From IMG/VR virus record IMGVR_UViG_3300025536_000010, positions 1-64,000 of that record: 64,000 bases of DNA; one strand, 5' to 3'. Shown piece after piece: positions 11,343 through 59,444 of this stretch. Under the pieces are notes generated by a model, which saw only the letters and a list, made by a program, of their open reading frames with translations, searched no databases and had not been told where the DNA came from. The first letter of the stretch is position 1, and each line of letters starts with the position of its first letter. The translations under genes were made by a program, and so were the position numbers.

Positions 11343-14300
11343 ATGAACCCAGCAGCCGCTCCAGGCCCCGTTATCAACAACATCAACGGCGGTATGGCCC
11401 AGCAGGGTCGGTTCTCGGGCATGTTCGGCATGCACCCGGGTTTCAACTTCATGGCGGCGACGCAGCACGCCCAGCGGAACCCAAATGCAGCGGCTCACCC
11501 GACGATTCCGCAGCAGGGTATGGCCACAGCGGGTGGAGTGCAGCAGGCCCTGCAAAAGGCGAGTTTCGCGGCGCGGGGAGATTACCTGGACGACGTGCTT
11601 TTCGAGCTTTGGGAGGGGCAGAAGCGGGCGGAAGCACAGACAGCGGGGTCGATGGCGGCCGGAGCGAGCGCAACTGCGCCTGCGGGTGGCCAAAATGGTG
11701 GGCAGCAGCCGAACAGGTCGACGCGGGGCATGATGGGTGGCGGTTATCGCGGTGCGCGCGGTGGTGGCGGGCAAAACCACGGAGTCGTGGGACAAACCAG
11801 CGGGCCGCAACCGCTCGTGGGGAACGTGAACCCACTCGGGCAAATGGGCAATCCGATGGCTACCGCCGCCCGACAAGGCATGGCGAGCCTCGCCCCCCGC
11901 CCCTTTGGGGGGACAATGGCCCCACAGCCGCTAAAAATGGCGATGATGGTGCCCGGTCCTGGCGGCATGGCTCCGAACCCAGGCGCCACGGCCCCCATGC
12001 CGCCGCCTCCGGGGCCTCCGGGCATGGCTGCGCCTGGTGGCGGTGGGCCGCTGCCGCCGCCTCCTCCGAATGGCGGCGCACCGATCCCCGGACAGCCTCC
12101 GGTCGACCCCATGACAGGCCAACCGATGGACCCTGCTGCGATGGGCGGCGGTGCGCCTCCGGGGCCTATCGACCCCATGACGGGACAACCTGTGCAGGCT
12201 CCAATGGCCTCGCCGCCGGCTCCGCCGTTGCCTGCTAACCCGCGGCCTGCGCAAGCCTCGCCCAAGGACAGCCAACAGGCCCAGCGGGAGGCAAACATGC
12301 TGCGCATGCTGGAGCAAAAACAGCAGTCGGAGGCATCTGCGACCCCGCAGGACGCCAACGATGACATCCAGGCGCAGAGCATGGCTTTGGCCAAGACGGC
12401 TGAGTCGCCTGGTATGCGGATGATGCGTGAGAACCACAACCGCATCACGCTGGGCGTGCTGGGCGAAGACCTCCGCCGCAAGTACGGTATGGGGCCGTTC
12501 TCCAAGCGTGCCTCCGAGAGTGATTCGTTCTCCGACATGAACGAGGACGATACGTTGGGCAGCCCCAAGGCCATGAGCAAAGGCTGGCAGTGGCGCTACA
12601 TGAACAAGGACGTCGACGAGGGCCTCAGTCAGTGGTTGCCCAGGCTGTTCAAGAGCCAGCACACGCCTGTCAGTGAACTGCTGGCCTCGCCGGGCAAGCA
12701 GGGGCTGCTCGGCGGCCTGGGCGGGCTCGCGTTGGGTGGCGCCGGCGGTGCGCTGGGCGCCCAACATCTCGGTGCAAACCCGGTGCTCGGTGGTTTAGGT
12801 GGCGCCGGGCTTGGGGCGATCCTGGGCGGCCTCAGCGGCTATGGCTCGCGCCGCAAGAAGAATGACAAGCTGATCGACGCCATGCGTTTCATGCCGCCGG
12901 GAGCCACACTGGGCGAGATGGACCAGCTGGAGGCAGCCAAGAAAGCACCCAAGCCAGACCCCATCGCCGGCTCGGCGGTCCAAAAACTGGCTTTTGAGAA
13001 ATTCGCCCAGGCGCTCAAGCAGAGCATGGAGGTCGAGCAGGCTGTCCCGCTCGGTCTGGCGGGCGTGGGCGCTGGTGTTGGTATGTTCGCTGGCGGTGCC
13101 CAGGGACGCGACCTGGCCCAACGGAACATGCAGGCCCAACTGCCCGGTCAGATCGAGGCCGCACGGCTCCAGCACCGCAACTCGATGAACCAGGGCCTCG
13201 ACAAGATGTACGGCCGTGGCCTCGACAACTGGGCGAAGCGGCGGGCGGGTATCCTCCAGGAACGCATGGCCATCGGCCCGGACGGCAATTTCAAGGTGCC
13301 GCGTCCGGCGGGGAATGAGGGCTGGGAGCGGATGCGCGATCAGCATGGGCAACTCGCGGCTTCGGGGCCACAGCTGCGCCAGGGTTTCAATCCGCAGCAG
13401 GCCGCAGCCGCCAAGCAGAAGTTCCTGGCTTCGGGGCAGGCTCAGCAGTTCATCCAGCAGCAACGTGGGGCCTGGCAGAACCAGCTGGGACGCATGCAGA
13501 GTCAGGCACCTGGACAGGTTGCCGCGGCCGGGCGTCGGGGCATGCTGCGCGGTGGTTTGGCGGGCGGTTTGGGCGGCCTGGCTGTGGCGAGCGCCCCCAT
13601 GCTCATGGGCATGTTCGGTGGTAAGCAGGCCGAGGATGGCAGCATCTATCTGGAGAAGCAGGCCAAGGAGGTCACCTACACGGACCCCAAAACGGGCAAG
13701 CAGGTGACGACGGACCATGAGGCCCTTGGTAAGAAATGCGCGGAGATGCTCTACAAGACCGTCGACGACGGGGACACGCAGCTTATCCACGCCGCCATGC
13801 TCGATCACCTGCTGCGTCTCAATAAGCGCTCGGCTGATGCCGAGCGTGACACAAACTGCCCGCTCTGCGGCATGCTGCACGAGTTCGGGCTGGCGTGCAG
13901 CACCAAAAAGGCCGAGCAAGAGGATACCAGTCTCAAGTCGCCCAACCGCAGCGCCTCGGGCGAGAGCAAGGGCCTGACCTTCGCGCACCGTGCGGACGAT
14001 CACGCCACGGGTCCAGCGGCCTGGCAGAGCATCGACCGTTTCCTCTCGAAAGACGTCACCGTGAAGACGGACCCCTACAAGGGCAAGCACGGCGGCACCA
14101 AGAAGGACACGGTCAACTACAAGCTCGCCGCCCTCAGTGGTGTCGAGTCGGGCTTGCTGGGCCTCAAGGGGCGCCTGATGCAGCCAGGCGGTTGGCTGGA
14201 TGAACTCATGGATGCCCAACGCAGCCCCGTTCAAGCGGGCGGTTCGACCTTTGGTACGCTGCCCAAACTCAAGCCACCCGATCTCAAGGGTTTGCTGGGC

Positions 14301-16139
14301 AAGCTCACGGGTGCTGCTCCCGCTGCGCCCACGGACGCGCCTGCGGATGCGCACCTGGCGCCGTTGCCGGTCGCGCTAGCCGGTGCGGGTATTGGTTTGG
14401 GCGGTGCCGGTCTGGGCTATGGCCTGGGCAAGCTGATGGGTAAGAAAAAGGAGGAACCCGAGAAGAGTGGGGCGGACGCTTTGCGGGAACTATCGCTGAG
14501 CCCGGCAGCCGTGGGCTTCTTCGACTACTGCGACCGTTTGGGCCTCGACGCGACCCAGGTCAAACAGGCTGTCGACGTGGCGTGTGCCAAGTTCCCCGAA
14601 GCGGAAGGAGAACTGCGTCATGGCCTCGCCAAGCGAGCCCAGGCGCAGGTGCCCTTTTGCCTGGAGAAACAGGCGAACAAGTTGCGTGGGATGCTGAACG
14701 CCGGCAAGAGCGCCTGGGGCTGGATGCGCGGGGCCAAGCCCGTCATGGCGCAGGGCCTCCAGACCGCTCCGGTGACCAGGGCGACAGCTTCACCATTGGT
14801 GCAGCAGGCGGCGCAACTGCGGCAGGCGACGCCTGGCCTGGGCGTACAGCAGGCGATGGCGCAGGCGCGCTCGCAGCAGCCTGGCATGCAGGGCGTCTTC
14901 AATAACTACATGCGCGGTGCCACGCCCTACTCGGTGGCTTCGTCGGTCGGCCAAACGGCGATGGGTGGCCTCGGCGGTGCTTTCGCTGGCGAAGAACTGG
15001 GCCTACCTGGCGGTGGTTGGACTGGGGCCGCAGCTGGTGCGTTGGCCATGAACCCGATGGCCCGGCGCTTCATGGCCAGGAACCCCAGGAGCCTGGCTCA
15101 GCCCTTCATGCGGGGCGGGCAAGGAGCCATCGGCGGCGGTTTCGCCGGCAGCGCGATCGACCAGACAGCGGGTGCTCTGGGTTACGACACCAACGGGCGT
15201 TTCGCTCAGGCCGGTGCCGGGTTCGGTTTGCTTGCTGGCGGCGGACGCGGCCTCGCAGCCATGCGTGTCGCTCGCCACGGTGCGTTCTTGCCGGGCGTGA
15301 TGGCGCAGGCGTCCAAGATGTCGGGACCAGCGCGTGCGGACTTCTTGGCCAAGAACATGAGCATGGCGGGCCAGGTCAACTCGCTGGGCGCCAAGGCTAC
15401 GCAGGGCCTGGAGCAGTTCGCGCGTGGTTCAATGGCTCCCCTCACGGGCGTCGGCAAGACGGGCTGGAACCTGATGACGGGGGCCAAGAACCCGTTCAGC
15501 AGTGCCTGGAAGGGTGCGGTTCCGGGCACTCGTCTGGGACGCATTGGCGCTACCGTGGGCGGCGTTGGCATGGGCGCCACGGCGCTGGGCATGGGCTCGG
15601 AGTACCTCCATAACCGATTCAGCAACGCGGTCGATGAAAAGCTGGGCGACGTCTACAACCAGGCCATGCCGCAATTCCAGGATGATGCGGCGGGCTTCCT
15701 CGACCAGTACATGCAGAGTCGGGGTCTGATGAACGAGCAGGGCCAGTTCGATCCCATGCAGACGGTCAACCGCAACGGCGGCATCATGGGCAGCATGATG
15801 CAGGGCAGCGACAAGATCTTCCAGGGCCTGGGCATGGACCCGAGTCGCATGAGCCCCATGCAGAAGATGATGATTATGGGCGGCGCACTCGGCCTGGGCG
15901 GCGGGGCAATGGGCGGTTCGCCGGGCGTGGCAGGCGCAGGCGGCCTTGCCATGATGGGCGGGCTTCTGCCTACACTGATGCAGGGTCAGGGGCAGGGCGG
16001 ACAACGCTATTCGGGCTACAACCCGATGCAGCAGCAGTCGGCCCCTGGTTACGAAGGCCAGGCGCCTGGACAGAACCCGAACTCCCCACAGGCCCGCAAC
16101 GAATGGCTGCACCAGCAACAACTCCAGCAGGGAGGTTAA
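11343..16139 (+). CDS. Giant (1598 aa) Gly/Pro/Met/Gln-rich putative virion/ejection polyprotein
   Basis: RBS GGAGG; Pro-rich region with DPMTGQP x2; repeated glycine-zipper segments; K-x-A motifs between blocks. Confidence 0.65.
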   Translation: MNPAAAPGPVINNINGGMAQQGRFSGMFGMHPGFNFMAATQHAQRNPNAAAHPTIPQQGMATAGGVQQALQKASFAARGDYLDDVLFELWEGQKRAEAQTAGSMAAGASATAPAGGQNGGQQPNRSTRGMMGGGYRGARGGGGQNHGVVGQTSGPQPLVGNVNPLGQMGNPMATAARQGMASLAPRPFGGTMAPQPLKMAMMVPGPGGMAPNPGATAPMPPPPGPPGMAAPGGGGPLPPPPPNGGAPIPGQPPVDPMTGQPMDPAAMGGGAPPGPIDPMTGQPVQAPMASPPAPPLPANPRPAQASPKDSQQAQREANMLRMLEQKQQSEASATPQDANDDIQAQSMALAKTAESPGMRMMRENHNRITLGVLGEDLRRKYGMGPFSKRASESDSFSDMNEDDTLGSPKAMSKGWQWRYMNKDVDEGLSQWLPRLFKSQHTPVSELLASPGKQGLLGGLGGLALGGAGGALGAQHLGANPVLGGLGGAGLGAILGGLSGYGSRRKKNDKLIDAMRFMPPGATLGEMDQLEAAKKAPKPDPIAGSAVQKLAFEKFAQALKQSMEVEQAVPLGLAGVGAGVGMFAGGAQGRDLAQRNMQAQLPGQIEAARLQHRNSMNQGLDKMYGRGLDNWAKRRAGILQERMAIGPDGNFKVPRPAGNEGWERMRDQHGQLAASGPQLRQGFNPQQAAAAKQKFLASGQAQQFIQQQRGAWQNQLGRMQSQAPGQVAAAGRRGMLRGGLAGGLGGLAVASAPMLMGMFGGKQAEDGSIYLEKQAKEVTYTDPKTGKQVTTDHEALGKKCAEMLYKTVDDGDTQLIHAAMLDHLLRLNKRSADAERDTNCPLCGMLHEFGLACSTKKAEQEDTSLKSPNRSASGESKGLTFAHRADDHATGPAAWQSIDRFLSKDVTVKTDPYKGKHGGTKKDTVNYKLAALSGVESGLLGLKGRLMQPGGWLDELMDAQRSPVQAGGSTFGTLPKLKPPDLKGLLGKLTGAAPAAPTDAPADAHLAPLPVALAGAGIGLGGAGLGYGLGKLMGKKKEEPEKSGADALRELSLSPAAVGFFDYCDRLGLDATQVKQAVDVACAKFPEAEGELRHGLAKRAQAQVPFCLEKQANKLRGMLNAGKSAWGWMRGAKPVMAQGLQTAPVTRATASPLVQQAAQLRQATPGLGVQQAMAQARSQQPGMQGVFNNYMRGATPYSVASSVGQTAMGGLGGAFAGEELGLPGGGWTGAAAGALAMNPMARRFMARNPRSLAQPFMRGGQGAIGGGFAGSAIDQTAGALGYDTNGRFAQAGAGFGLLAGGGRGLAAMRVARHGAFLPGVMAQASKMSGPARADFLAKNMSMAGQVNSLGAKATQGLEQFARGSMAPLTGVGKTGWNLMTGAKNPFSSAWKGAVPGTRLGRIGATVGGVGMGATALGMGSEYLHNRFSNAVDEKLGDVYNQAMPQFQDDAAGFLDQYMQSRGLMNEQGQFDPMQTVNRNGGIMGSMMQGSDKIFQGLGMDPSRMSPMQKMMIMGGALGLGGGAMGGSPGVAGAGGLAMMGGLLPTLMQGQGQGGQRYSGYNPMQQQSAPGYEGQAPGQNPNSPQARNEWLHQQQLQQGG
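12980..12998 (-). repeat. Dispersed motif copy inside CDS (reverse orientation)
   Basis: Reverse complement CTCAAAAGCCAGTTTTTGG. Confidence 0.6.
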
Positions 16140-28486: not shown

Positions 28487-29707
28487 ATGCAGCAGCTGCA
28501 AACGCTCAAGGACGGCGACCGTAAGGCCCTCGTCCCGCTCAACGACAAACACTTTGGCGGCAAGGACAAGAAGGGTCGACCGCTCTGGAAGGACTATCAG
28601 TACGACCGGCTGGTGGCCGCTTACCACCACATCACCGACTACTCGGTGGCCGTAGACGTGGGCGCCCACGTCGGCCTGATCTCGCAGCGCCTGGCCGAGC
28701 GCTTCGGCACCGTCTACGCTTTTGAGCCCGACCCGCAGAACTTCTTGTGTCTGTGGCACAACACCCGGTTTCTAACGCCGGTGCTGCGCGTGCCGATGGC
28801 CCTGGGCGACAAGACGGCAACCGGCGGCATCGACCGCGGCAAGGGCGAGAACAGCGGCGACGTGTGTATCGACCCCAAAGGCACCGGCGTCGACATCATG
28901 GCCCTGGACGATTACGACCTGCCAGACCTGGGCCTGCTCAAGATCGACGTGCAGGGCTACGAACACCTGGTCCTGGAAGGTGCCCGTAAGCTCATCCAGG
29001 CGTTCGCCCCGGTGGTCATCGTGGAGTGCGAGGAGCCTGGCAAGCTGCGCCGGGACTACTCCAAAGGCAAAGACCTGGTCGGGGCTTTCTTCGCCCAGGA
29101 GCACTGGGATTACCGCCTGGTTGCCAAGGTCGGCCACGACCGCATCTACGCCCCCGGCCCTAACGGTGCGCGGCCCTACACCAAGTACGCCATCCGGGGC
29201 GACTACCACTGGCAGCAGAACATCCCTGGCAAGGTGATGGGGAAGTGCATCAAAGAAGTCACCGACTACATCAACGCCCAAAAGCACGAGGCCGTGCTGG
29301 ACGTCGGCTGCGGTGACGGGCACTGCACCAGCATGCTCAAAAACGCTTTCGGCACCGACGACAACGGCACGGCCCTGGCCCTGGCCCGTCGTCATGGTAT
29401 CCCTTGTGCGCAGCTGTCGGCGTACCGCTTGCAGTATCTGGGTCGCCAGTTCGGCGGCGTCTGCATGCTCGACGTCCTCGAACACCTGCCGCGGCAGGAG
29501 CAAGCCCTGCGGATCGCCGCCCAGGTCGGCGACAACCTCTACATTCTGAACCCGGACCCGGTCGGCACGCACTGGCACGCCAGCGAGTTTACCGACGAGG
29601 CCCTGCTCAAGTTCGTCACCGCCAACGGCTGGCAGGTGAAGTACCACAAGCGCTACGAGATGTCCGACGACAACAAAAAGACCTTCGTTCATCTGGTCAA
29701 GCCATGA
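28487..29707 (+). CDS. Tandem methyltransferase: FkbM-family plus class I SAM domain
   Basis: VDVGAHVG..AFEPDP..LKIDVQGYE (FkbM); second domain LDVGCGDG..DVLEHL. Confidence 0.85.
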   Translation: MQQLQTLKDGDRKALVPLNDKHFGGKDKKGRPLWKDYQYDRLVAAYHHITDYSVAVDVGAHVGLISQRLAERFGTVYAFEPDPQNFLCLWHNTRFLTPVLRVPMALGDKTATGGIDRGKGENSGDVCIDPKGTGVDIMALDDYDLPDLGLLKIDVQGYEHLVLEGARKLIQAFAPVVIVECEEPGKLRRDYSKGKDLVGAFFAQEHWDYRLVAKVGHDRIYAPGPNGARPYTKYAIRGDYHWQQNIPGKVMGKCIKEVTDYINAQKHEAVLDVGCGDGHCTSMLKNAFGTDDNGTALALARRHGIPCAQLSAYRLQYLGRQFGGVCMLDVLEHLPRQEQALRIAAQVGDNLYILNPDPVGTHWHASEFTDEALLKFVTANGWQVKYHKRYEMSDDNKKTFVHLVKP

Positions 29708-30615
29708 AACTGCGTGTTGCTTTCTACGCCCTCACGGGGCACAGGTTCGACAAGGGCATCTCCGGGGCGTTTGCCTCGGGGGTGCTGGCTTGCGGGGACG
29801 ACTACATCCAGCCTCGGCTGGAGGAGTACACAGGCACGCCCGACCCGAACGTGGACGTCGCGGTGTTCCTGGGCGTCAAGAACAACACCAGGGACGTGTT
29901 TCGCAGTTACCTGGCGGCGGGTAAGGCGGCAGTGATCTGGGACAAGGGTTACACCCGCATCCGTGGCGGGCCGCTCAAGACGCTCTACTGGCGGGTGTCG
30001 GTCAACGCCTTCCAGCCGCACCACTACCTGTTCAACACGCCGCACGACTCGGAGCGCTGGGAGCGCCTGGGCTTGAAAATCAAGCCGATGAAGCCCGAGC
30101 GGAAGACGGGCCAGGGGCGCATCCTCTACTGCGGCGGCTCGCAGAAGTATTGCGACTGGCACGATCTGGGAGACGCCACCAAGTACGCCGAGTGGGTGCT
30201 GCGTAAGGCTCGCAAGTACACAACGCGGCCTTTGGCCTACCGCCCCAAGCCAGGCTGGGAGGAGGCCACGCCGATCCCCGGTGTCACCTACGCCACTGGC
30301 TTGTTCGGCACTTTCGGCAAGGAGCTACCTGGCACCTACCAGGTGGTCGTCTTCGGCTCGAACGCCGCGTTCGAGGCGCTCATCAACGGCGTACCCGCTA
30401 CGGTGCTTGGTGACGGTATCGCCCGCTCGTTGGCCAACACCAGTCTGCGCGACCTGGAACGGCCGCGGCTGCCAAGCCAAGACGAGGTTTACAAGCTGGC
30501 CAGCGCGGCGGCATACTGTCAGTGGACGATGGAGGAGATGGCCTCGGGGGTTGCCTGGGAGCACGTCAGGACGACGGTGCTACAGCACAAGGAGGGAGCG
30601 TATGGGCCAGGTTAA
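29704..30615 (+). CDS. GT-B capsule-synthesis-like glycosyltransferase, paralog 2
   Basis: LAYRPKP, VVVFGSNAAFEALINGVP, AAYCQWTMEEMASG; similar to the 26631 protein. Confidence 0.65.
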   Translation: MKLRVAFYALTGHRFDKGISGAFASGVLACGDDYIQPRLEEYTGTPDPNVDVAVFLGVKNNTRDVFRSYLAAGKAAVIWDKGYTRIRGGPLKTLYWRVSVNAFQPHHYLFNTPHDSERWERLGLKIKPMKPERKTGQGRILYCGGSQKYCDWHDLGDATKYAEWVLRKARKYTTRPLAYRPKPGWEEATPIPGVTYATGLFGTFGKELPGTYQVVVFGSNAAFEALINGVPATVLGDGIARSLANTSLRDLERPRLPSQDEVYKLASAAAYCQWTMEEMASGVAWEHVRTTVLQHKEGAYGPG

Positions 30616-31156
30616 ACGGTTTTTGTTCGTGGCCGCTGGTCCGACGGCGCAGGAGGCCAAACGCTTCCTGCGCTATGGCCCGCTGGTCACCATGAACTGG
30701 GCGCTGGAGTTGTTCGACAAGGTCGACATCGCCTGTTTCGGCTCGCCGAATAAGGCACGCACGACCCGCGAGCACTGGCACCGAGCCAAGCTGCTCGTAC
30801 CGCTGTTCCCCCAAGGCAAAGCCGACAAACTCGGCATGCCGGCCGAGAAAACAACCTGCTTCCATATTCCCGAGCCGCCGCGGGAACCGGAGAAGAACTT
30901 CCGTTTTCTCCGCGAGTACATTCGGGCCGGTAACGTCCTGGGCCGCGCGACCAAGGTGCTGCACTTCATGAGGAAGGCTGGCTACGGCGAGGTCTGGTTG
31001 TTCGGCCACGACGGCGGCACGTTCTACCACCCGGCGTTAGGCCAGGAGCGCCTGACGCGCCGGCACGACAAAGACCGTTTTGTCGTCGAAGAGACGCTCA
31101 AGCATCTGGGGTTCGCTTACAAGTTCTGGCCCTCGATACCTGACGGCTGGCTCTAG
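30602..31156 (+). CDS. MptE-like / GT42-like transferase, paralog 2
   Basis: LFVAAGPT, VTMNWA, GYGEVWLFGHDG. Confidence 0.55.
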   Translation: MGQVKRFLFVAAGPTAQEAKRFLRYGPLVTMNWALELFDKVDIACFGSPNKARTTREHWHRAKLLVPLFPQGKADKLGMPAEKTTCFHIPEPPREPEKNFRFLREYIRAGNVLGRATKVLHFMRKAGYGEVWLFGHDGGTFYHPALGQERLTRRHDKDRFVVEETLKHLGFAYKFWPSIPDGWL

Positions 31157-31168
31157 CACGGAGGACAA

Positions 31169-31864
31169 ATGAGCAACCGCATCTTTATCGGGTGGGACAG
31201 CCGGTTCCCCGAGCCGGCTTTGGTGCTGGAGTACAGCCTGCGGCGGCGCTCCAGCATACCGCTCGACATCCGCTTCTTGGATGCCCGGCACTTGGCGGAC
31301 TGCCACGGCTTCCGCCTGCCGGCGGACAAGTTAGCCAGCACCGAGTTCACCTACAGCCGCTTCCTGGTGCCCTGGCTGTGCGGTTATGAGGGCAAGGCCC
31401 TGTTCCTGGACAACGACATGGTCTGCCTGGGCGACGTCGCCGAGTTGTTCGCCCTGCCCATGACCGTGCCGGATGGTGTCAGTTCGCGGCTGCTGGCCCT
31501 CCGCGTGGTCAAGCACGACCACCAGCCGGTCGACGGTTCGGTGAAGATGTACGGGGCCGTGCAGACGGCCTACCCGCGCAAAAACTGGTCCAGTCTGATG
31601 CTCATGGACTGCGACCAGCTGCGCTGCTGGACCAAGGAGGTTGTCGAGGCTGGCAACGGCGCCCGGCTGCACCGCTTTGCCGACCTGGCTGACTCCCAGA
31701 TCGGCGACGTCCACCCGTCCTGGAACTCCCTGGACACGCTGGACGCCGGCACCAAACTCATCCACTGGACCAGCGGCGGCCCCTGGTACGAGCAGTATCG
31801 GGACTGCCCGCACGCTGACCTCTGGTTCAAGACCCGCGAGCTTATGCAACGAGAGCGTCGATGA
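31169..31864 (+). CDS. Glycosyltransferase, GT-A (GT8-like, phage type)
   Basis: RIFIGWDSR, STEFTYSRFLVP, ALFLDNDM, YPRKNWSSLML, LIHWTSGGPW. Confidence 0.85.
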   Translation: MSNRIFIGWDSRFPEPALVLEYSLRRRSSIPLDIRFLDARHLADCHGFRLPADKLASTEFTYSRFLVPWLCGYEGKALFLDNDMVCLGDVAELFALPMTVPDGVSSRLLALRVVKHDHQPVDGSVKMYGAVQTAYPRKNWSSLMLMDCDQLRCWTKEVVEAGNGARLHRFADLADSQIGDVHPSWNSLDTLDAGTKLIHWTSGGPWYEQYRDCPHADLWFKTRELMQRERR

Positions 31865-32502
31865 AGCGCTTCATCAACCTGTTCCACGCCCTGGACAAGC
31901 TCGGCGGTCAGGGCGGCACGCACCTGGGCCTCCTGGAAGTCGGCACTGGCGAGGGCGTCCGGGCAGCCCAGCTGCTGAACTACTGGCTGGCTGCTGGTCA
32001 GCGTTCGGCCAGCTACCGTGGTTTCGATCTCTGGGAACAGCTGACGCCGGACGTAGCCAGGGAAGACGGTGTCAAGATGCCGGAGCGGTTGCCGCAGCGC
32101 CAGGAAGTCCTGCGGCGACTGTCGCGCACTGGAGCAGGCGTGACCCTCTACCAAGGCAACACCCGCGAAACCCTGCCGGCTTTCGCGGCCGAGTGCCAGA
32201 AGTCTGGCATGCTGTTCAACCTGATCTTCATCGACGGCGGCGCCAGCTTTGACACTATCACCTCGGACTGGAAAGCAGTCAGCAAACTGGTGCGCCCCGA
32301 CACCATCGTTCTCTTCGACGGCTACTACGACAACCGGGACGACCTTGGCTGCTGGTCGGTGATCCAGTACCTTGCCCTGGGTAAGGCGTTCCGCGTATTC
32401 AAGCTGGACCCGGTCGACTACATCCACGACTCGGGTTTGGAGGTCCGCATGGTCTGGGTGGAGAGGGCGGCCCATGCGCTTCTGGAAACCAAAAACCGTT
32501 GA
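31861..32502 (+). CDS. Class I SAM-dependent methyltransferase
   Basis: LEVGTGEG, GFDLWE, LIFIDGG, VLFDGY. Confidence 0.8.
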   Translation: MKRFINLFHALDKLGGQGGTHLGLLEVGTGEGVRAAQLLNYWLAAGQRSASYRGFDLWEQLTPDVAREDGVKMPERLPQRQEVLRRLSRTGAGVTLYQGNTRETLPAFAAECQKSGMLFNLIFIDGGASFDTITSDWKAVSKLVRPDTIVLFDGYYDNRDDLGCWSVIQYLALGKAFRVFKLDPVDYIHDSGLEVRMVWVERAAHALLETKNR

Positions 32503-33103
32503 AGGTGCCCCGCGCGTCGGTATCGGCGTGGCTTCGTTCCTGAACGGGGACACCCGCCGCCAGGCGGCTTTGCGCTCGCTGGTGGCGTCCTTCCAGGCCC
32601 AGACCTGGGACAACTGGAAGATGCTCATTTACCACGATGGACCGCTCGACCGGAACATCCGCCTGGAGTGGGACCAGCAGGTCAAAGACAACCGCGTCGA
32701 CCTGATCGAGACGGCCGAGCGCAAACAGAAGTTTGGCCACCCCCACCGGCAGAAAGCCGTCGATACCCTCTGCGCGACCTGCCAGTGGGTCATGCTCACC
32801 AACGACGACAACTGGTACGCCCCGGTCTTCCTGGAGTGGTTACTGGCCGCCGGCACCAAGAAGGGCGCCAAGTTCGTCTACTGCGACATGGTTCACTCGC
32901 ACAAGCTGTGGAAATACCTGCCGACGCAGCCGCGCTACCGGCATCTGGACCTGGGTGGTTTCCTGGTCCATTCCTCTCTTGCGAAAAAGCACCCCTTCGA
33001 CAAAACTGCTTTCAACGCGGACGGCGACTGGATCAACCGTTTAGCGGTTGCTGCCGGCAGCCGTATCGAGAAGGTGCCACATGTGCTTTTCGTTCACAAC
33101 TAG
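32474..33103 (+). CDS. Glycosyltransferase family 2
   Basis: QAQTWDNWKMLIYHDG, LTNDDNWY (DxD-like), FVYCD, DGDW. Confidence 0.8.
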   Translation: MRFWKPKTVEGAPRVGIGVASFLNGDTRRQAALRSLVASFQAQTWDNWKMLIYHDGPLDRNIRLEWDQQVKDNRVDLIETAERKQKFGHPHRQKAVDTLCATCQWVMLTNDDNWYAPVFLEWLLAAGTKKGAKFVYCDMVHSHKLWKYLPTQPRYRHLDLGGFLVHSSLAKKHPFDKTAFNADGDWINRLAVAAGSRIEKVPHVLFVHN

Positions 33104-33111
33104 GAGCTACC

Positions 33112-33834
33112 ATGCGTGAAGTGACCCTGCACCGCTGCGGCGCTGGCATTGACGAACTGTTGAGCGTCGGGGCCAGTGAAGAGAACACCAATCACTACGT
33201 CATCGGCGTCAACCTCCGACCTTTGGGCACCATTCAGGAGATGCCGCAGACCTGGCTCTTGCGGTTCCAACAAGGCCCGCTGGGCGACGATAAGACCAAC
33301 GTCAACGGCCTCACCCTGGAGGCGGTCATCGCGGTCTGCATCGACCGGCTCACTCGTTTGAACGGCGAAGTACCTTGCCCGGAGAACATCGTTGCCCTGT
33401 GTCGTCTGGAAGACGCCATGCGGGCACTGCACGCACGCACCCGCGCCCGTAACAACCAAGGAGTTGAAGGCACCATGAGCAAGCACGCGAGCGGAGCCCC
33501 CAGTGAAGTCGGCGCGAAGGCGACACCGGGCGACACCGGCCCCCAGGGCCACCAAGGGGAACAGGGCGAGCCTGGCCTGCGGGTCAGCGTTCGGCGCAGT
33601 ACCACGGCAACCCAGCTGGTCCTGCGGCATAAGGACAGCGAGCGCGTCCTGGGCGTCGACTACGTCAAAGACAACTGGAAAGCCTGGGGCGAGATCGAGA
33701 GCGTCGTGCGGCACTATCACCCACGGCTCACCAGCGACGAGTGGGCGGTGCTGGAGGGTCTGGCGACAAAGGTGCCGTCGAAGAACGGCCTGGCCGAACT
33801 CAAGTCGGCCCTGTTGCAGGCCGGCAAGCTCTAA
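33112..33834 (+). CDS. tad1: Tad1-like anti-defence signal sponge with collagen-like linker and C-terminal extension
   Basis: FQQGP...VNGLTLEAVIAVCIDRL...CPENIVALCRLEDAMRALHARTRARNNQGVEGT matches the Tad1 family pattern; followed by G-X-Y run GDTGPQGHQGEQGEPG. Confidence 0.75.
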   Translation: MREVTLHRCGAGIDELLSVGASEENTNHYVIGVNLRPLGTIQEMPQTWLLRFQQGPLGDDKTNVNGLTLEAVIAVCIDRLTRLNGEVPCPENIVALCRLEDAMRALHARTRARNNQGVEGTMSKHASGAPSEVGAKATPGDTGPQGHQGEQGEPGLRVSVRRSTTATQLVLRHKDSERVLGVDYVKDNWKAWGEIESVVRHYHPRLTSDEWAVLEGLATKVPSKNGLAELKSALLQAGKL

Positions 33835-33868: not shown

Positions 33869-34807
33869 ATGTGGGAAACCGTCAAGAAGAAGTGGTGGAT
33901 CGCCCTCGCGGCCGTCTTCGTGATCCCGTACTTCGCGTACCAGAACATGAACGAGCGGCTGGGCGAGCAGACCGTGATCCTGGACGACAAAATCCCGGAT
34001 CTCCAGCTGACGGTGAACGTCAACGGCGCCTGGGTGATCTACCAGGACGGCAAGAAGCTGCCGGCTGAGGGCCTCGGCCTGGTGACCGTGACGCTCGAAG
34101 ACCACAAGACGAATCCCGACAAGCTCAAGCGCCAGGGCCTGGATCTCAAGGAGGCAGACTTCCCGGTCGTGGTCTTCTTCAACCAGTCTGGTTTCGATGC
34201 CACGGGCGACCCCGTGCTTGTGCGGCGCGCCAGGGACGGCGAACTCTTGTTTTCCGTCAAGACGACGGTGCCACGCCTGACGCTCCTCCAGGCCGTGCGT
34301 TCAGGCGGGTTCCGGGCATGGACGCCCGGCGACAAGGGTAAAGCCAGAACGATCACCGACGACGAGTTCTACAAGGATTACATGGGAGTCGAGCCGCCGC
34401 AGCAGCTGCCGCCGGCTGACCAACTCGACAAGATGTCGGACGAGGAACTCAAGAAGCTGGGCGTCACCCGCCGACCTAACGCCGAGCAGTCTAAGACCGG
34501 CATCCGCGGTAGCGTCTTCAAGGTCGGCGGTAACCCGGCGGTCGCGCCGCTCAAGGTGCCCGTCCATGCCTACAAGGGGAAGATTAAACCCTTCGAGAAG
34601 TTCGACGACAAGGACGACCGCCGCGCTCTTTCGGGCATGAGCGAGCCAGACGGCTACTTCTCTTTGGCGCTGCCGCCAGGCGTCTATACCATCGTTGTCG
34701 AGGTCGACGGTAAATGTCGTGGCAACGCCCTCAGCAGTACGGACTGGCCCACCGTCGAGGTCAAAGATCAATGGCTCGATTACGAGTTTCGCGTGCCGGC
34801 GAGGTGA
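33869..34807 (+). CDS. Membrane-anchored protein with C-terminal carboxypeptidase-regulatory-like domain
   Basis: N-terminal TM; DGYFSLALPPGVYTIVVE. Confidence 0.65.
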   Translation: MWETVKKKWWIALAAVFVIPYFAYQNMNERLGEQTVILDDKIPDLQLTVNVNGAWVIYQDGKKLPAEGLGLVTVTLEDHKTNPDKLKRQGLDLKEADFPVVVFFNQSGFDATGDPVLVRRARDGELLFSVKTTVPRLTLLQAVRSGGFRAWTPGDKGKARTITDDEFYKDYMGVEPPQQLPPADQLDKMSDEELKKLGVTRRPNAEQSKTGIRGSVFKVGGNPAVAPLKVPVHAYKGKIKPFEKFDDKDDRRALSGMSEPDGYFSLALPPGVYTIVVEVDGKCRGNALSSTDWPTVEVKDQWLDYEFRVPAR

Positions 34808-35416: not shown

Positions 35417-35535
35417 ACGCGGCACAATAAGTGACGTCTACGGACATACCTATGAGGGGCCTGGTGCTCGCACCAAGGCTCCTCGTGGCGTATAATAGGC
35501 ACTATGTAACCGTCGCACCCCAAAGGAGCCGCACC

Positions 35536-36576
35536 ATGCCAAAGATTCGCTACCGGACCTTCAAGTTCAAGCCGGAGACGCTGGAACGCATCGACAAGGT
35601 CAACCAGATCGTCCAGCAGTACGCTGCCCAGGGCATCTATCTAACCCTGCGTGGTATCTACTACCAGTTCGTCAGCCGTGACTGGTTCCCCGAGTCCTGG
35701 AAAGACCCCAAGACTGGCAGCACTAACAACGAAAAGTCGTACGACAAGCTGGGCAACATCATTGCCGATGGACGCCTGGCGGGCCTGATCGACTGGGACG
35801 GCGTCGTCGACCGCACCAGGCAGGTCCGGGAGTTGAACAGCTGGCGTAACCCGCAGACCATCGTCAAGGCTTGCTCCGAGCAGTTTCGCCTGGACAAGTG
35901 GGCCAACCAGGACCACTACATCGAAGTCTGGGTCGAGAAGGATGCTGCTTTGGGCAGCATCGAGACGGTCTGTAACGAGAACTTCGTGCCCTACATGTCG
36001 TGCCGCGGGTATGCGTCGGCTTCCGAGATTTGGACGGCCGGGCATAACCGTTTCAAGCCGCGCGTCCACAAGAAGAAGTGCCACGTTCTCTACCTGGGCG
36101 ACCACGACCCCTCCGGGTTGGACATGCCACGCGACCTCCAGGAGCGCCTGGACATGTTCACCCGCGCCCCGGGCGGCGTCAGCCTGGAACGCCTGGCCCT
36201 TAACATGGACCAGGTCGACCAGTACAACCCGCCGCCCAATCCCACGAAGATGACGGACAGCCGCGCGGCCAAGTACGTCGAGGAGTACGGGGAGACGTGC
36301 TGGGAACTGGACGCGCTGGACCCGGTTGTCATCCGCGATTTGATTCAGAATGCCATCGACCAGTATAAGGACGTGGACCGCTGGCAGGAGGCGCTAGACG
36401 AAGAGAAGGAGGCCCGAGGCCACCTTGCAAGCATTGCCAGGAACTGGGAAGATGTCGTCGACAACTTGCCCGTCGAGACACCGGACGACGATGACGTCGA
36501 GGAGCCCCAAGAAGAGGCGGAAACGGATGCCGCCGAGAAACCCAAGGACGACGAGGAAGAAGACTATTTTGCTTAG
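35536..36576 (+). CDS. Topoisomerase VI subunit A / Spo11-like winged-helix plus TOPRIM protein
   Basis: TLRGIYYQ (candidate catalytic Tyr), VWVEKD, LYLGDHDPSG, ELDAL; acidic tail; TATAAT at 35491; RBS AAAGGAG. Confidence 0.8.
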   Translation: MPKIRYRTFKFKPETLERIDKVNQIVQQYAAQGIYLTLRGIYYQFVSRDWFPESWKDPKTGSTNNEKSYDKLGNIIADGRLAGLIDWDGVVDRTRQVRELNSWRNPQTIVKACSEQFRLDKWANQDHYIEVWVEKDAALGSIETVCNENFVPYMSCRGYASASEIWTAGHNRFKPRVHKKKCHVLYLGDHDPSGLDMPRDLQERLDMFTRAPGGVSLERLALNMDQVDQYNPPPNPTKMTDSRAAKYVEEYGETCWELDALDPVVIRDLIQNAIDQYKDVDRWQEALDEEKEARGHLASIARNWEDVVDNLPVETPDDDDVEEPQEEAETDAAEKPKDDEEEDYFA

Positions 36577-40035: not shown

Positions 40036-40097
40036 CTTAGCTATTAGGTAGACTCGCATTTGATTCAGAGATGTCTCAAAGGCCAGGGAGGGCTACC

Positions 40098-40895
40098 ATG
40101 CCACGGCAGGCACTGTGCGTCGGCGTCAACTACGCCAACACCGAGTTCGAGCTGCGCGGCTGCGTCAACGACGCGAACGACTGGGCGCAGTTTTTCGACA
40201 AGCGCGGCTTCTCCACGTCCGTCCTGACCGAGAACCAGGCGACCCGCCAGAACATGCTCGCGGCGATGGAGAGCCTGGTGCGGCAACTGCAACCGGGTGA
40301 GATCGGGGCGATCCAGTTCAGCGGCCACGGCACCTGGCTGCCCGACCGAGACGGGGACGAACCGGATGGCCGAGACGAGGCCCTGGTGCCGCACGACGTC
40401 ACCGACGACGGCCGCGGCCTCATCATCGACGACGAGTTGCGTGTTATCTTCGGCCGGCTCCGCGAGGGCGCACGGCTCCTGTGGATCTCGGACTGCTGCC
40501 ACTCGGGTACGGCTTTCCGCTTCTTCGGCAACGGTGCCTCCAAACGCCGCGTACGCTTCTTGCCGCCGTCTCACTTCCTGGTCGATACCGGCCTGGTGCG
40601 TCGCATGGAGCGGGCCTACGGTCAACCGCCCAAGCGGACCAACGCAGCTCTACCTGGCGTTCTCCACCTTTCGGGCTGCCGCGATCACGAGTACAGCGCC
40701 GACGCCGAGATCGACGGCCGGTTCAGCGGGGCGTTATCCTACTACGCTTTGCTGGCGTTCAAGCAGGTAGTCCAGCAGAAGGGCACCTACCAGGACGTCC
40801 ACAAACTCGTCCGCCAGTACCTGCCCAGTTGGGACTTCCAGCAGACCCCGCAGCTGAATGGCGCGACGGCCTTGAAACGGACGCCGCTGTTCTAG
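40098..40895 (+). CDS. Metacaspase (peptidase C14)
   Basis: ALCVGVNY, LRGCVNDA, FSGHG (His), DGRDEALVP, SDCCHSG (Cys). Confidence 0.92.
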   Translation: MPRQALCVGVNYANTEFELRGCVNDANDWAQFFDKRGFSTSVLTENQATRQNMLAAMESLVRQLQPGEIGAIQFSGHGTWLPDRDGDEPDGRDEALVPHDVTDDGRGLIIDDELRVIFGRLREGARLLWISDCCHSGTAFRFFGNGASKRRVRFLPPSHFLVDTGLVRRMERAYGQPPKRTNAALPGVLHLSGCRDHEYSADAEIDGRFSGALSYYALLAFKQVVQQKGTYQDVHKLVRQYLPSWDFQQTPQLNGATALKRTPLF

Positions 40896-52080: not shown

Positions 52081-53985
52081 ATGCGGGACGGTTTCTGGAG
52101 GAGGTTACTCATGCCCTGGCAATCGGAAGCGGACTTCGTCAAAACTGCTGGGCAGTCTGGCCACGCCGGGCTGCCCAACAAACACATCCACGTCGACACG
52201 GCCAAACAGCCCTCCGTCTCCGAACAGACGGAGGGTCAGCTGTACTCCGACATCGTCGCCAAGTTAATCGACGTCGAGCCGCGCATGTGCTGCCCTAACT
52301 GCGGCGCACGCGCACACGACATCAAAGACGGTGGCCAGGTTTACACCCGCGACATCTTGGAGTCGGGCGGGAAAACACACAAGGGCGACATCCCCAAGTG
52401 TCCGATCCCCGGCCTGGACATCCCGACGATGGCATACACGGTTAGTCCGTGCGGCTGCCGCGTAAGCGTGGAATGGGCCGGGGCGTTCGCGGCCGAACTC
52501 CAGAGCCGCCTGGGTGGCAGTAAACCGGCCCCCATCATCGGCGTCACGCCCAAACAGCGTGAGTTCAAACTGAACAAGCTGGAGGCGGACCTGGCGAGGC
52601 TCTACGCTCTCCAAGACAAAGCAACCGGCGCGCAGAAAGAGGCCGTCGACTACTGGATCGTGGTCGTCGCTGACCAGATCCAGCGGCTCTGTCCCGGCAA
52701 ACACAACCAGCAACCGTTGCCGAAGAAACTGGAGCCCGAAGTGATCCAGTGGGCCGTCAAAAACGCGCACAGTCAGCCGACCGCGCAGGTCACGACGACG
52801 CCCTACTACCCGTTGTTGGCAAGCCAGGGCGGTGCGCTACCGGCGGGTACGCCGCTTTACCAGAGCGCGAGCGGAGCCATGAGCACCGTACCTGTTTACA
52901 GCGGACAAAAACCAGCCGGACACTACGCAGTGCCCGGCCACCCGAACCCTACGGAGCAAACCGACGAGCATCCGAACTGGTCGGCTTGGGGTTACCCGCC
53001 AGGCTACAAGATGCCCAAGAACCTTGGGGTCGCCGCGCGCGTGGCGCAGGACAAGCTGGCAAACACCACGGCGAATCAGGCGGACGCACTGGCCCTGGCG
53101 ATACAGATGACGCAAGCTGGCATAATGAGTGCCACCAGCGTCGGCAAACTGGTCGGCGTCGACCTCGGCAAGGAGAAAACACAGTTCGTGAAGGGTAACG
53201 TCGGCAAAGTCCACAGCGTCAACGTCTACGTTATCCACGGTGAGTACGTCGTGCGGATCGAGACGGAGGCGTTCGAGCCCGTCGAGCGCAAGTTTGGCTC
53301 CCTGGCTGCGTGCATTGCCTACGCCAAACAGCTGAACGACAACCGACACACCAATCCTATCCTGGGTGCGGTGGCTGAGTTGCTATCGCGGCGTTTGAGC
53401 GAGATCCAAAACGCCCAGAAGGCGGCCAACCTGACGAACACGTCGGGTGTACCGCCGTTCAAGACGACCAAATTCACGCCGTCGCCGAACAAGGTCGTCC
53501 TGCACGGAGCCAACGCCGAAGAAACGTCGGTCTATGCGAAAGCAGCGTCGTCGCTGGACGAGATGCTCGGTGCGCTGGGCGTCCCGACCATCGTGCCGGG
53601 ACAGCCGGCGGCGACTCAATACACACCGGCCGACGTCAAGAAGATCCTGAGCTACTTCACCACGCACCAGGGCACCATCTACGGCGTCGTTAGTCAGTAC
53701 CTGCTACCGGCCGGCAGCGCTACGCCGACACTCACGTTGCTGGAGACGGTCGACGAGATCGCTAACAACTTGCGGCAGCACACCGAGAAAGGTATGTCCC
53801 TATCGGCGCTGTCCAAGCAGTTCCTTACGGCCTGGCGGCAGGCAATCGAGATCGGGAAGAAACTCCTCCCCGACGTCCAGGAGGTTGATGCGCCCGCGCC
53901 TACCACAACGCCGGCCCCGCAGCGGGTCGACGTCCGCGGGAAGCGGAAGCGGCGGACTATCCGCCAGATCGAGGATAACGAATGA
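52081..53985 (+). CDS. Large hypothetical protein with N-terminal Cys cluster
   Basis: RBS GGAGG; CCPNC..SPCGC. Confidence 0.7.
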   Translation: MRDGFWRRLLMPWQSEADFVKTAGQSGHAGLPNKHIHVDTAKQPSVSEQTEGQLYSDIVAKLIDVEPRMCCPNCGARAHDIKDGGQVYTRDILESGGKTHKGDIPKCPIPGLDIPTMAYTVSPCGCRVSVEWAGAFAAELQSRLGGSKPAPIIGVTPKQREFKLNKLEADLARLYALQDKATGAQKEAVDYWIVVVADQIQRLCPGKHNQQPLPKKLEPEVIQWAVKNAHSQPTAQVTTTPYYPLLASQGGALPAGTPLYQSASGAMSTVPVYSGQKPAGHYAVPGHPNPTEQTDEHPNWSAWGYPPGYKMPKNLGVAARVAQDKLANTTANQADALALAIQMTQAGIMSATSVGKLVGVDLGKEKTQFVKGNVGKVHSVNVYVIHGEYVVRIETEAFEPVERKFGSLAACIAYAKQLNDNRHTNPILGAVAELLSRRLSEIQNAQKAANLTNTSGVPPFKTTKFTPSPNKVVLHGANAEETSVYAKAASSLDEMLGALGVPTIVPGQPAATQYTPADVKKILSYFTTHQGTIYGVVSQYLLPAGSATPTLTLLETVDEIANNLRQHTEKGMSLSALSKQFLTAWRQAIEIGKKLLPDVQEVDAPAPTTTPAPQRVDVRGKRKRRTIRQIEDNE

Positions 53986-59363: not shown

Positions 59364-59444
59364 TGATGCTGGTGGTCCTGTAACCGCGGGGCATGGTCGC
59401 ATCCGCGGCGTTAGACGGTGTTCTACATCCCAATGGAGGTTGCC

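What the first reader, a model, noticed from the sequence alone, without database searches (positions are those of the whole stretch)
33112..33834. Tad1-like immune-signal sponge fused to a collagen-like linker and unknown domain
Seen: a Tad1-pattern N-terminal half of about 120 aa ending in GVEGT, then six G-X-Y triplets (GDTGPQGHQGEQGEPG) and an approximately 85-aa extra domain. Established: Tad1 sequesters Thoeris gcADPR and also binds CBASS cyclic oligonucleotides; characterised members are single-domain oligomers. Inference: a tethered or bifunctional anti-defence protein. Some pocket residues look diverged, so the ligand may differ.
Basis: partly seen in the sequence, partly recalled or inferred. 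Interest (0 to 1): 0.6.

Follow-up and report, generated by a model that had tools for sequence, protein, structure and literature searches.

The report
Two-domain Tad1-like phage sponge protein
A giant uncultured phage encodes a true relative of Tad1, a phage protein that soaks up bacterial immune alarm molecules, joined by a short collagen-like linker to a second, previously undescribed domain that related phages also carry, sometimes on its own.

Summary
Window 33112-33834 (+) is one 240-aa gene in a 234,886-bp uncultured jumbo-phage record.

- **Ligand pockets:** three of the four known gcADPR/cyclic-dinucleotide pocket residues are kept (N92, R109, R113). F82 is replaced by Leu. The cyclic-trinucleotide and hexamer-interface residues are absent.
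- **Collagen-like stretch (residues 140-155):** five full G-X-Y triplets plus a closing Gly, not six. It beats chance (about 1.3e-4) but is absent from all relatives and is below Pfam's Collagen cut-off.
- **C domain (residues 156-240):** a confidently folded domain with no known relatives in Pfam, PHROGs, PDB, BFVD or the ESM Atlas.
- **Not a one-off fusion:** I retrieved about 25 related proteins. Seventeen have Tad1-like plus C domain, six have the C domain alone and two have another N-terminal part. Every contig long enough to show flanking genes places them in the same syntenic slot.

Best reading: a two-module anti-defence protein, a dimer-pocket sponge plus an autonomous second module. 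Function is inferred, not shown. It is a new variant of a known kind.

The parts
33102..33106 (+). Shine-Dalgarno-like AGGAG, 5 nt before the ATG. It overlaps the TAG stop (33101-33103) of the upstream glycosyltransferase-like gene.
   Evidence: Read directly from the sequence.
33112..33834 (+). Whole gene, 240 aa (P0001), stop codon included.
   Evidence: Relatives start with the same MR(E/D/P)V motif.
33112..33477 (+). Tad1-family domain, residues 1-122: an N-terminal beta-sheet plus a two-helix hairpin ending in QGVEGT. Pocket residues are Leu83 (equivalent of CbTad1 F82), N92, R109 and R113. The cyclic-trinucleotide positions are Pro90 and Cys97.
33478..33528 (+). Unconserved linker predicted to be disordered, residues 123-139 (SKHASGAPSEVGAKATP).
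   Evidence: pLDDT below 50. Identity to relatives across the whole linker region (residues 123-155) is 0-35%, mostly 0-20%, and its length is variable.
33519..33539 (+). Perfect 10-bp tandem duplication (GGCGACACCG x 2.1) at the start of the collagen-like stretch.
   Evidence: Tandem Repeats Finder.
33529..33576 (+). Collagen-like stretch, residues 140-155 (GDT GPQ GHQ GEQ GEP G). It is private to this phage.
   Evidence: Shuffle test gives p about 1.3e-4. Absent from all 14 aligned relatives.
33577..33831 (+). Conserved C-terminal domain of unknown fold family, residues 156-240: three beta-strands followed by four helices. Invariant or near-invariant residues are R157, W189, W192, E196, T207, E210, N225, G226 and E229.
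   Evidence: pLDDT 90-98. Exhaustive phmmer found 20 relatives among 1.84 billion representatives, and a profile word search added 5 more. No match in Pfam, PHROGs, PDB, BFVD or the ESM Atlas.
32474..33103 (+). Upstream neighbour: a GT2-like glycosyltransferase. The start is approximate; the longest ORF begins at 32372. It is the last gene of a methyltransferase/glycosyltransferase cluster (28487-33103). This is context, not shown to be part of the feature.
   Evidence: Pfam Glycos_transf_2 E 3e-5. 53-66% identical to the gene directly upstream of the relatives.
33869..34807 (+). Downstream neighbour: a 312-aa protein with an N-terminal hydrophobic anchor and a weak CarboxypepD_reg-like match. 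Context only.
   Evidence: 47% identical to the downstream gene in L009/L010, and a similar gene follows P0016.

Best explanation
The gene encodes a two-module phage counter-defence protein.

**Module 1 (residues 1-122)** is a Tad1-family sponge domain. By analogy with CbTad1, two copies pair and form pockets at the dimer interface. Asn92, Arg109 and Arg113, with Leu83 in place of the stacking Phe, would hold an ADP-ribose-derived or cyclic-dinucleotide immune signal. This would keep a host Thoeris- or CBASS-type effector from being switched on.

This subfamily lacks the Arg/Thr pair and the hydrophobic patch that build the canonical hexamer and its cyclic-trinucleotide site. It is therefore expected to be a dimer-pocket sponge only, possibly with altered ligand preference.

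**Module 2 (residues 156-240)** is an autonomous, lineage-specific domain that related phages also encode alone at the same genomic position. It most likely binds a second target, either another small signal or a host or phage protein.

**The linker** between the modules is freely variable. In this phage alone it has acquired five collagen-type triplets, which may add trimerisation but are not required by the family.

Shown here: homology, predicted fold, residue conservation, conserved architecture and synteny. Inferred: oligomeric state, ligand, anti-defence activity and the role of module 2.
For: - **Pocket residues.** The residues whose mutation abolishes gcADPR and 2',3'-cGAMP binding in CbTad1 are F82, N92, R109 and R113 (bioRxiv 10.1101/2023.11.15.567273). 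They map to L83, N92, R109 and R113. N, R and R are kept in 14 of 15 members, and the F position is aromatic in 11 of 15.
- **Conserved architecture.** Seventeen of the 25 retrieved family members carry both domains, six have the C domain alone and two have other N-terminal parts.
- **Synteny.** Every contig long enough to show flanking genes places the gene in the same slot.
- **Faster divergence than neighbours.** The protein is 30-38% identical to relatives, against 53-66% for the adjacent GT2, 37-63% for Cpn10 and 59% for the topoisomerase-like gene. This fits an arms-race gene.
- **Genomic setting.** It lies among auxiliary and DNA-metabolism genes, not with the collagen-like structural ORFs at 96 and 145 kb.
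- **Precedents.** Sponge-sponge fusions such as Tad2-Acb4 exist, and Sequestin was discovered through its fusions (bioRxiv 10.1101/2025.07.12.664507). A multi-part Tad1 is known in the jumbo phage PhiKZ.
Against: - No binding or anti-defence activity can be tested here.
- The F82 equivalent is Leu in this protein.
- The hexamer interface and cyclic-trinucleotide site are missing.
- The Tad1 C-terminal 'lid' is not a free end but continues into the linker.
- One relative (P0010) has lost C89, E91, N92 and R109 yet keeps the architecture. Ligand binding is therefore not indispensable to every member.
- The gene is vertically conserved at a fixed position beside a sugar/methyl-transferase cluster in one phage clade. 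It is not scattered like many accessory anti-defence genes.
- The local Pfam scan did not reach Acb2_Tad1_hairpin, although a precomputed annotation lists it.
- The host and its defence systems are unknown.
Confidence: 0.5

Rival explanations
1. Virion-delivered Tad1. The C-terminal domain, helped here by the collagen-like stretch, anchors the sponge to a virion component. It is then packaged and enters the next cell with the DNA. This is functionally like PhiKZ gp184/Tad1, whose extra part is wedged into the capsid and whose Tad1 part is released and injected.
For: - PhiKZ gp184 is a 230-aa inner-capsid vertex protein carrying a Tad1 domain, and it is reported as injected.
- This is also a jumbo phage.
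- Its genome encodes two large collagen-like ORFs with the same G-x-Q style of triplets, GDQGDTGEQG and GPQGHQGDPG. Co-assembly is therefore conceivable.
- Some phage homologues of the N domain are annotated as structural proteins.
Against: - The gene sits among non-structural genes: transferases, a topoisomerase-like gene, Cpn10 and ribonucleotide reductase.
- The extra part is C-terminal and unrelated to the gp184 N-terminal part.
- The collagen-like stretch is absent from all relatives.
- DNA similarity to the collagen ORFs is only 26 bp at 88%.
- A tether domain occurring alone in sister phages is hard to explain unless it is itself a virion protein.
Confidence: 0.15
2. The protein serves the adjacent glycan or methyl-modification cassette. 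It would be a nucleotide-sugar or nucleotide-binding accessory, a regulator or a substrate, and not an immune-signal sponge.
For: - In this window and in the longer related contigs (L009, L011, L013, L015, L016, L021) the gene directly follows a GT2-like gene.
- That gene ends a cluster of FkbM-type, Methyltransf_24, MptE-like, GT8, DegT, Kdo-hydroxylase-like and carrier-protein genes.
- The gap to the upstream gene is 8 nt, so co-transcription is likely.
- The C domain's invariant Trp, Trp, Asn and Glu residues would also suit a carbohydrate site.
Against: - The synteny extends far beyond the cassette, to Cpn10 and Peptidase_C14. It can be explained by common descent of these phages.
- No precedent links the Tad1 fold to glycan synthesis.
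- The residues kept are exactly those that bind gcADPR and cGAMP in CbTad1.
- The supposed carrier-protein fusion in P0011 was not confirmed.
Confidence: 0.12
3. The Tad1-like domain is a decayed or repurposed fold that no longer binds a signal. It would serve only as a scaffold or oligomerisation unit for the functionally important C domain.
For: - F82 is replaced by Leu, and the hexamer and cyclic-trinucleotide residues are lost.
- P0010 has lost most pocket residues.
- The C domain persists without the N domain in six relatives.
- The architecture changed at least twice on the C-domain tree.
Against: N92, R109 and R113 are kept in 14 of 15 members despite only 26-40% overall identity in the N domain. 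That argues for selection on the pocket.
Confidence: 0.12

Closest known systems
Tad1 (Thoeris anti-defence 1) of the Clostridium botulinum prophage (CbTad1, PDB 7UAV/7UAW/8KBE) and of Bacillus phage SBSphiJ7
   Different: - Canonical proteins are about 125 aa, single-domain and have a free C-terminal lid. This one continues into a linker and a second domain.
- F82 is Leu.
- The cyclic-trinucleotide and hexamer residues (Cb R90/T97; Cm M102/W103) are not conserved in this subfamily.
- Sequence identity is only 20-27%.
PhiKZ gp184 / Tad1 (PDB 8Y6V chain I)
   Same: It is a jumbo-phage Tad1-family protein of similar length (230 aa) with a Tad1 domain plus an additional part. The profile E is 8.6e-17. 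It keeps the C89, N92, R109 and R113 equivalents.
   Different: In gp184 the extra part is N-terminal and capsid-embedded, and the protein is processed by the head protease. Here the extra part is C-terminal, unrelated in sequence and preceded by a collagen-like linker. Virion association is untested here.
Sponge-sponge fusion proteins (Tad2-Acb4, Tad2-Sequestin, Sequestin-Acb4)
   Same: A known sponge domain is fused through a linker to another small domain that also exists as a stand-alone phage protein of about 100 aa. That pattern led to the discovery of Sequestin.
   Different: The partner domain here matches none of those families (no Pfam hit). It is confined to one phage clade at one syntenic slot. 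Its binding activity is unknown.
Phage and bacterial collagen-like proteins (Pfam PF01391; tail fibres; this phage's own ORFs at genome 95977-99897 and 142513-145809)
   Same: The G-X-Y periodicity has the same residue flavour (G-x-Q, GEPG).
   Different: There are only five triplets. The score is below Pfam's cut-off, the stretch is not conserved in relatives, and no trimerisation is shown.

Membership tests
Tad1 family (Thoeris anti-defence 1 sponges) | Sequence homology to characterised Tad1 proteins over the whole domain | tested here: met
   Single sequence against 8kbb_A: E 2e-5. Family profile against CbTad1, residues 21-124 of 125: E 3.5e-19.
Tad1 family (Thoeris anti-defence 1 sponges) | Tad1 fold: an antiparallel beta-sheet followed by a two-helix hairpin | tested here: met
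Tad1 family (Thoeris anti-defence 1 sponges) | gcADPR/cyclic-dinucleotide pocket residues (CbTad1 F82, N92, R109, R113) | tested here: inconclusive
   N92, R109 and R113 are present. F82 is replaced by Leu83.
Tad1 family (Thoeris anti-defence 1 sponges) | Cyclic-trinucleotide site and hexamer interface (CbTad1 R90, T97; CmTad1 M102, W103) | tested here: not met
   The equivalents are Pro90, Cys97, Arg104 and Ala105. No member of the subfamily has the Arg/Thr pair. This feature defines the hexameric, trinucleotide-binding mode, not the fold family.
Tad1 family (Thoeris anti-defence 1 sponges) | Homo-oligomer with pockets at the dimer interface | not tested
The N-domain dimer was not modelled.
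Tad1 family (Thoeris anti-defence 1 sponges) | Binds and sequesters gcADPR or cyclic nucleotides, and inhibits Thoeris or CBASS in vivo | not testable with these tools
   Needs ITC, mass spectrometry and plaque assays.
Collagen triple-helix repeat proteins (PF01391) | A long uninterrupted G-X-Y run that reaches the family score | tested here: not met
   18.8 bits against a cut-off of 27.2, with five triplets. The run is still non-random.
Collagen triple-helix repeat proteins (PF01391) | Trimer formation | tested here: inconclusive
   The complex prediction of 3 copies of residues 123-240 gave no verdict.
FIVAR three-helix module (PF07554) | Profile-level similarity of the C domain to FIVAR repeats | tested here: not met
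   phmmer hit a FIVAR-rich LPXTG protein at E 1e-6. However, hhalign probability is 6.7% and there is no Pfam FIVAR hit for P0001.

The most novel reading that the evidence does not exclude
The C-terminal domain (residues 156-240) founds a new family of phage counter-defence modules. It would be either a sponge for a different immune signal or a binder of a host defence protein. It is revealed by its recurrent fusion to Tad1, in the way Sequestin was revealed by its fusions to Tad2 and Acb4. In this phage the collagen-like insert would bundle three such units, giving a multivalent, two-specificity trap.
Probability: 0.2. Interest if true: 0.75.

Novelty: new variant of a known kind. Interest (0 to 1): 0.52.

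Why it matters
Tad1 is one of the few known phage sponges. According to a 2026 review, it is so far the only anti-defence protein described in jumbo phages.

A conserved Tad1 subfamily that has lost the hexamer and trinucleotide site but gained a second, autonomous domain gives two things:
- a natural experiment on how sponge specificity and oligomeric state evolve;
- a concrete candidate for a new counter-defence domain, testable by simple binding and plaque assays.

If the second domain binds an unknown signal, it could also serve as a handle to discover that signal, as Tad1 and Tad2 did for 3'cADPR and His-ADPR.

Tried and rejected
- **Word-index protein searches.** The full-length protein and residues 1-125 found nothing but the protein itself. 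The exhaustive search was then used on the C domain, because the claim rested on absence of relatives.
- **IMG/VR scans.** The protein and a C-domain motif found only collagen matches or nothing.
- **Single-sequence AlphaFold2 model.** It was useless, with pLDDT 44.
- **Pfam Acb2_Tad1_hairpin (PF24729).** It is listed in a precomputed annotation. Neither my scan nor the genome search reproduced it.
- **FIVAR resemblance of the C domain.** Rejected, with hhalign probability 6.7%.
- **Carrier-protein fusion in P0011.** An upstream PP-binding gene in L011 suggested that P0011's N-terminal extension is an acyl-carrier domain. This was not confirmed.
- **Origin of the collagen stretch.** Recent copying from this phage's large collagen-like ORFs is not supported. 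The best match is 26 bp at 88%, E 0.095.
- **Alternative N-terminal parts of P0016 and P0018.** No match in Pfam, PHROGs or PDB.
- **PADLOC.** No hit for the protein.
- **Promoter and terminator scan.** At background level.
- **Complex prediction.** Three copies of residues 123-240 gave no verdict, score 0.24 against a mark of 0.42. This is evidence neither for nor against trimerisation. Six earlier attempts were unanswered.
- **Sequencing runs.** Only one DNA run, from a subsurface metagenome, and it is probably the source. No RNA run was found.
- **VIA-align wide search.** The list was filled by the N-domain hairpin, so the C domain was barely tested there.

Full report
**What is there**

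The window is the first 64 kb of a single-contig IMG/VR virus record of 234,886 bp with 62% G+C. CheckV rates it complete, so it is an uncultured jumbo phage. The only public run that holds the stretch is a subsurface metagenome, probably its source.

At 33112-33834 (+) lies a 240-aa ORF, P0001. An AGGAG sits 5 nt before the ATG and overlaps the stop codon of the upstream gene. The next gene starts 34 nt downstream.
- the N half ends in GVEGT (residues 117-121);
- GDTGPQGHQGEQGEPG occupies residues 140-155;
- 85 further residues follow.

**The N-terminal domain is a Tad1-family domain**

- P0001 alone hits CmTad1 (8kbb) at E 2e-5 and PhiKZ gp184 (8y6v_I) at E 9e-5 in the PDB sequence search. 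It hits PHROG 2428 at E 1.7e-17.
- tblastn against 50,697 phage records finds 59 records. All match residues 1-134 only. The six homologues I inspected were mostly 82-133-aa single-domain proteins, and several records of this set are annotated 'ABC transporter ATPase', as the original Tad1 was.
- A profile of 15 two-domain relatives (alignment A1) matches CbTad1 over residues 21-124 of 125 at E 3.5e-19. It matches gp184 at 8.6e-17 and CmTad1 at 2e-15.
- With that alignment AlphaFold2 gives mean pLDDT 82.8. There are two confident domains (1-122 and 156-240) and a linker (123-153) below 50. The single-sequence model was poor.
- Foldseek against PDB returns only Tad1 chains at E below 1e-3, with probability 1.0 and TM by target 0.63-0.73.
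- BFVD and the ESM Atlas return Acb2/Tad1-hairpin proteins.

**Ligand-site residues**

Li et al. (bioRxiv 10.1101/2023.11.15.567273) report the following:
- CbTad1 F82, N92, R109 and R113 form the pocket for gcADPR and 2',3'-cGAMP at the dimer interface.
- R90 and T97 (CmTad1 R88 and T95) bind cyclic trinucleotides and also build the hexamer.
- CmTad1 M102, W103 and K106 form a hydrophobic hexamer contact.
- Residues 116-122 form a C-terminal lid.

Mapping these through the printed alignments gives:

| CbTad1 or CmTad1 residue | Role | P0001 equivalent |
|---|---|---|
| F82 | pocket | Leu83 |
| N92 | pocket | Asn92 |
| R109 | pocket | Arg109 |
| R113 | pocket | Arg113 |
| R90 | trinucleotide site, hexamer | Pro90 |
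| T97 | trinucleotide site, hexamer | Cys97 |
| Cm M102 | hexamer contact | Arg104 |
| Cm W103 | hexamer contact | Ala105 |

Across the 15 aligned members:
- N92, R109 and R113 are each kept in 14.
- The F82 position is aromatic in 11.
- None has the Arg/Thr pair.

The dimer-interface pocket therefore looks to be under selection. The trinucleotide site and canonical hexamer interface are absent from the whole subfamily. One member (P0010) has lost most pocket residues.

**The collagen-like stretch**

- It holds five complete triplets plus a closing Gly.
- Six Gly at period 3 occurred in 26 of 200,000 shuffles.
- Pfam Collagen scores below its cut-off.
- The stretch is an insertion in a linker that is unconserved in length and sequence, and no relative has it there.
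- P0016 has a short GPAGEAGPAGRP before its C domain.
- A perfect 10-bp tandem duplication sits at its start.
- The same genome holds two large collagen-like ORFs with the same G-x-Q flavour. Nucleotide similarity to them is only 26 bp at 88%.
- A trimer prediction of residues 123-240 gave no verdict.

**The C-terminal domain is conserved, autonomous and without known relatives**

An exhaustive phmmer search of residues 156-240 against 1.84 billion representatives found 20 relatives. A profile search added five more. One relative, a FIVAR-rich LPXTG protein, is rejected below. The other 24, plus P0001 itself, divide as follows:
- 17 carry a Tad1-like N domain plus this domain;
- 6 are the domain alone, at 95-113 aa;
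- 2 carry other, unidentifiable N-terminal parts.

Invariant or near-invariant positions are R157, W189, W192, E196, T207, E210, N225, G226 and E229.

Nothing in Pfam, PHROGs, PDB sequences, Foldseek PDB, BFVD or the ESM Atlas matches it. The hit to a FIVAR-rich LPXTG protein does not survive profile comparison, at 6.7% probability. A caveat applies: the C domain could not be folded and searched on its own.

A maximum-likelihood tree of the C domains is poorly resolved. Its supported branches still force at least two changes of architecture. For example, the stand-alone P0022 nests with the fused P0023 and P0025.

**Context**

The window has, in order:
- a methyltransferase/glycosyltransferase cluster at 28487-33103, with FkbM-type, GT8-like, Methyltransf_24 and GT2 genes;
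- the target gene;
- a membrane-anchored protein;
- a small membrane protein;
- a topoisomerase-like gene;
- Cpn10;
- a caspase-like Peptidase_C14.

The contigs that carry relatives and are long enough to show flanking genes have the same order. In each of those the target follows a GT2-like gene of about 212 aa. Stand-alone C-domain genes occupy exactly the same slot.

Identities to the window's proteins are as follows:

| Protein | Identity to relatives |
|---|---|
| Target | 30-38% |
| GT2 | 53-66% |
| Topoisomerase-like | 59% |
| Cpn10 | 37-63% |
| Peptidase_C14 | 44-48% |

The gene is therefore a vertically inherited but fast-evolving member of a phage clade's auxiliary region. Both domains are single-copy in this genome.

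**Interpretation**

The strongest inference is that residues 1-122 still work as a nucleotide-signal sponge of the dimer-pocket type.

The C domain must have a function of its own, because it persists alone. Fusion to a known sponge, small size and stand-alone occurrence are the features that led to the discovery of Sequestin (bioRxiv 10.1101/2025.07.12.664507). A second binding module is therefore my preferred reading.

The rivals are:
- virion delivery, as in PhiKZ gp184/Tad1 (PMC11297242; bioRxiv 10.1101/2025.11.23.690004; PMC13282480);
- a role in the neighbouring modification cassette;
- a decayed Tad1 fold.

None can be excluded computationally.

**Verdict**

The Tad1 assignment is supported. 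'Tethered or bifunctional' is plausible but untested. The collagen-like linker is a private embellishment.

This is a new variant of a known kind: a Tad1 subfamily with a novel conserved partner domain. Interest is moderate at 0.52. It would rise to about 0.75 if the C domain proves to be a new counter-defence module.

Noticed in passing
Genome G000:C1 95977-99897 (+) and 142513-145809 (+), outside the window: Two very large collagen-like ORFs of 1306 and 1098 aa. They hold hundreds of residues in G-x-Q-type triplets and share a similar non-collagen C-terminal end. They are probably fibre proteins of this jumbo phage.
   Followed up: partly
window 40071-40895 (+): A phage-encoded caspase-like Peptidase_C14 (PADLOC 'caspase' E 2.8e-14). 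It is 44-48% identical to genes in the related contigs L013 and L015, and Peptidase_C14 genes are also annotated at the same place in L016 and L021, a few genes downstream of the target and next to Cpn10.
   Followed up: partly
window 28487-33103 (+) and related loci L009, L011, L013, L016, L021: A variable sugar/methyl-modification cassette: FkbM and other methyltransferases, GT8- and GT2-like, MptE-like, DegT aminotransferase, Kdo-hydroxylase-like, asparagine-synthase-like, a PP-binding carrier protein, sulfotransferase-like and cytidylyltransferase-like genes. This suggests that this phage clade makes or modifies a complex glycan. The target of the modification is unknown.
   Followed up: partly
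window 33519-33539 (+): A perfect 10-bp tandem duplication (GGCGACACCG x 2.1) inside the coding linker, at the start of the collagen-like stretch. The reading frame is nevertheless intact on both sides.
   Followed up: yes
window 35431-36576 (+): A 381-aa protein with a very strong match to PHROG 6247, 'DNA topoisomerase' (E 1.6e-103), but no Pfam hit. It is 59% identical in the related contigs L009 and L010.
   Followed up: no
window, large ORFs such as 11343-16139 (+, 1598 aa), 52081-53985 and 3326-4603: Nine of ten large ORFs tested have no informative PHROG match. Eight had none at all, one had only a short match to a family of unknown function, and only the ribonucleotide reductase at 59418-61811 was recognised. 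The phage lineage is very distant from catalogued phages.
   Followed up: no
Locus L007 (Burkholderia phage FLC9, LC667451.1 135653-136669): A 338-aa hypothetical protein of a 322-kb jumbo phage carries the Tad1-like hairpin at its C-terminus. The arrangement recalls PhiKZ gp184, so it is possibly another packaged Tad1.
   Followed up: no
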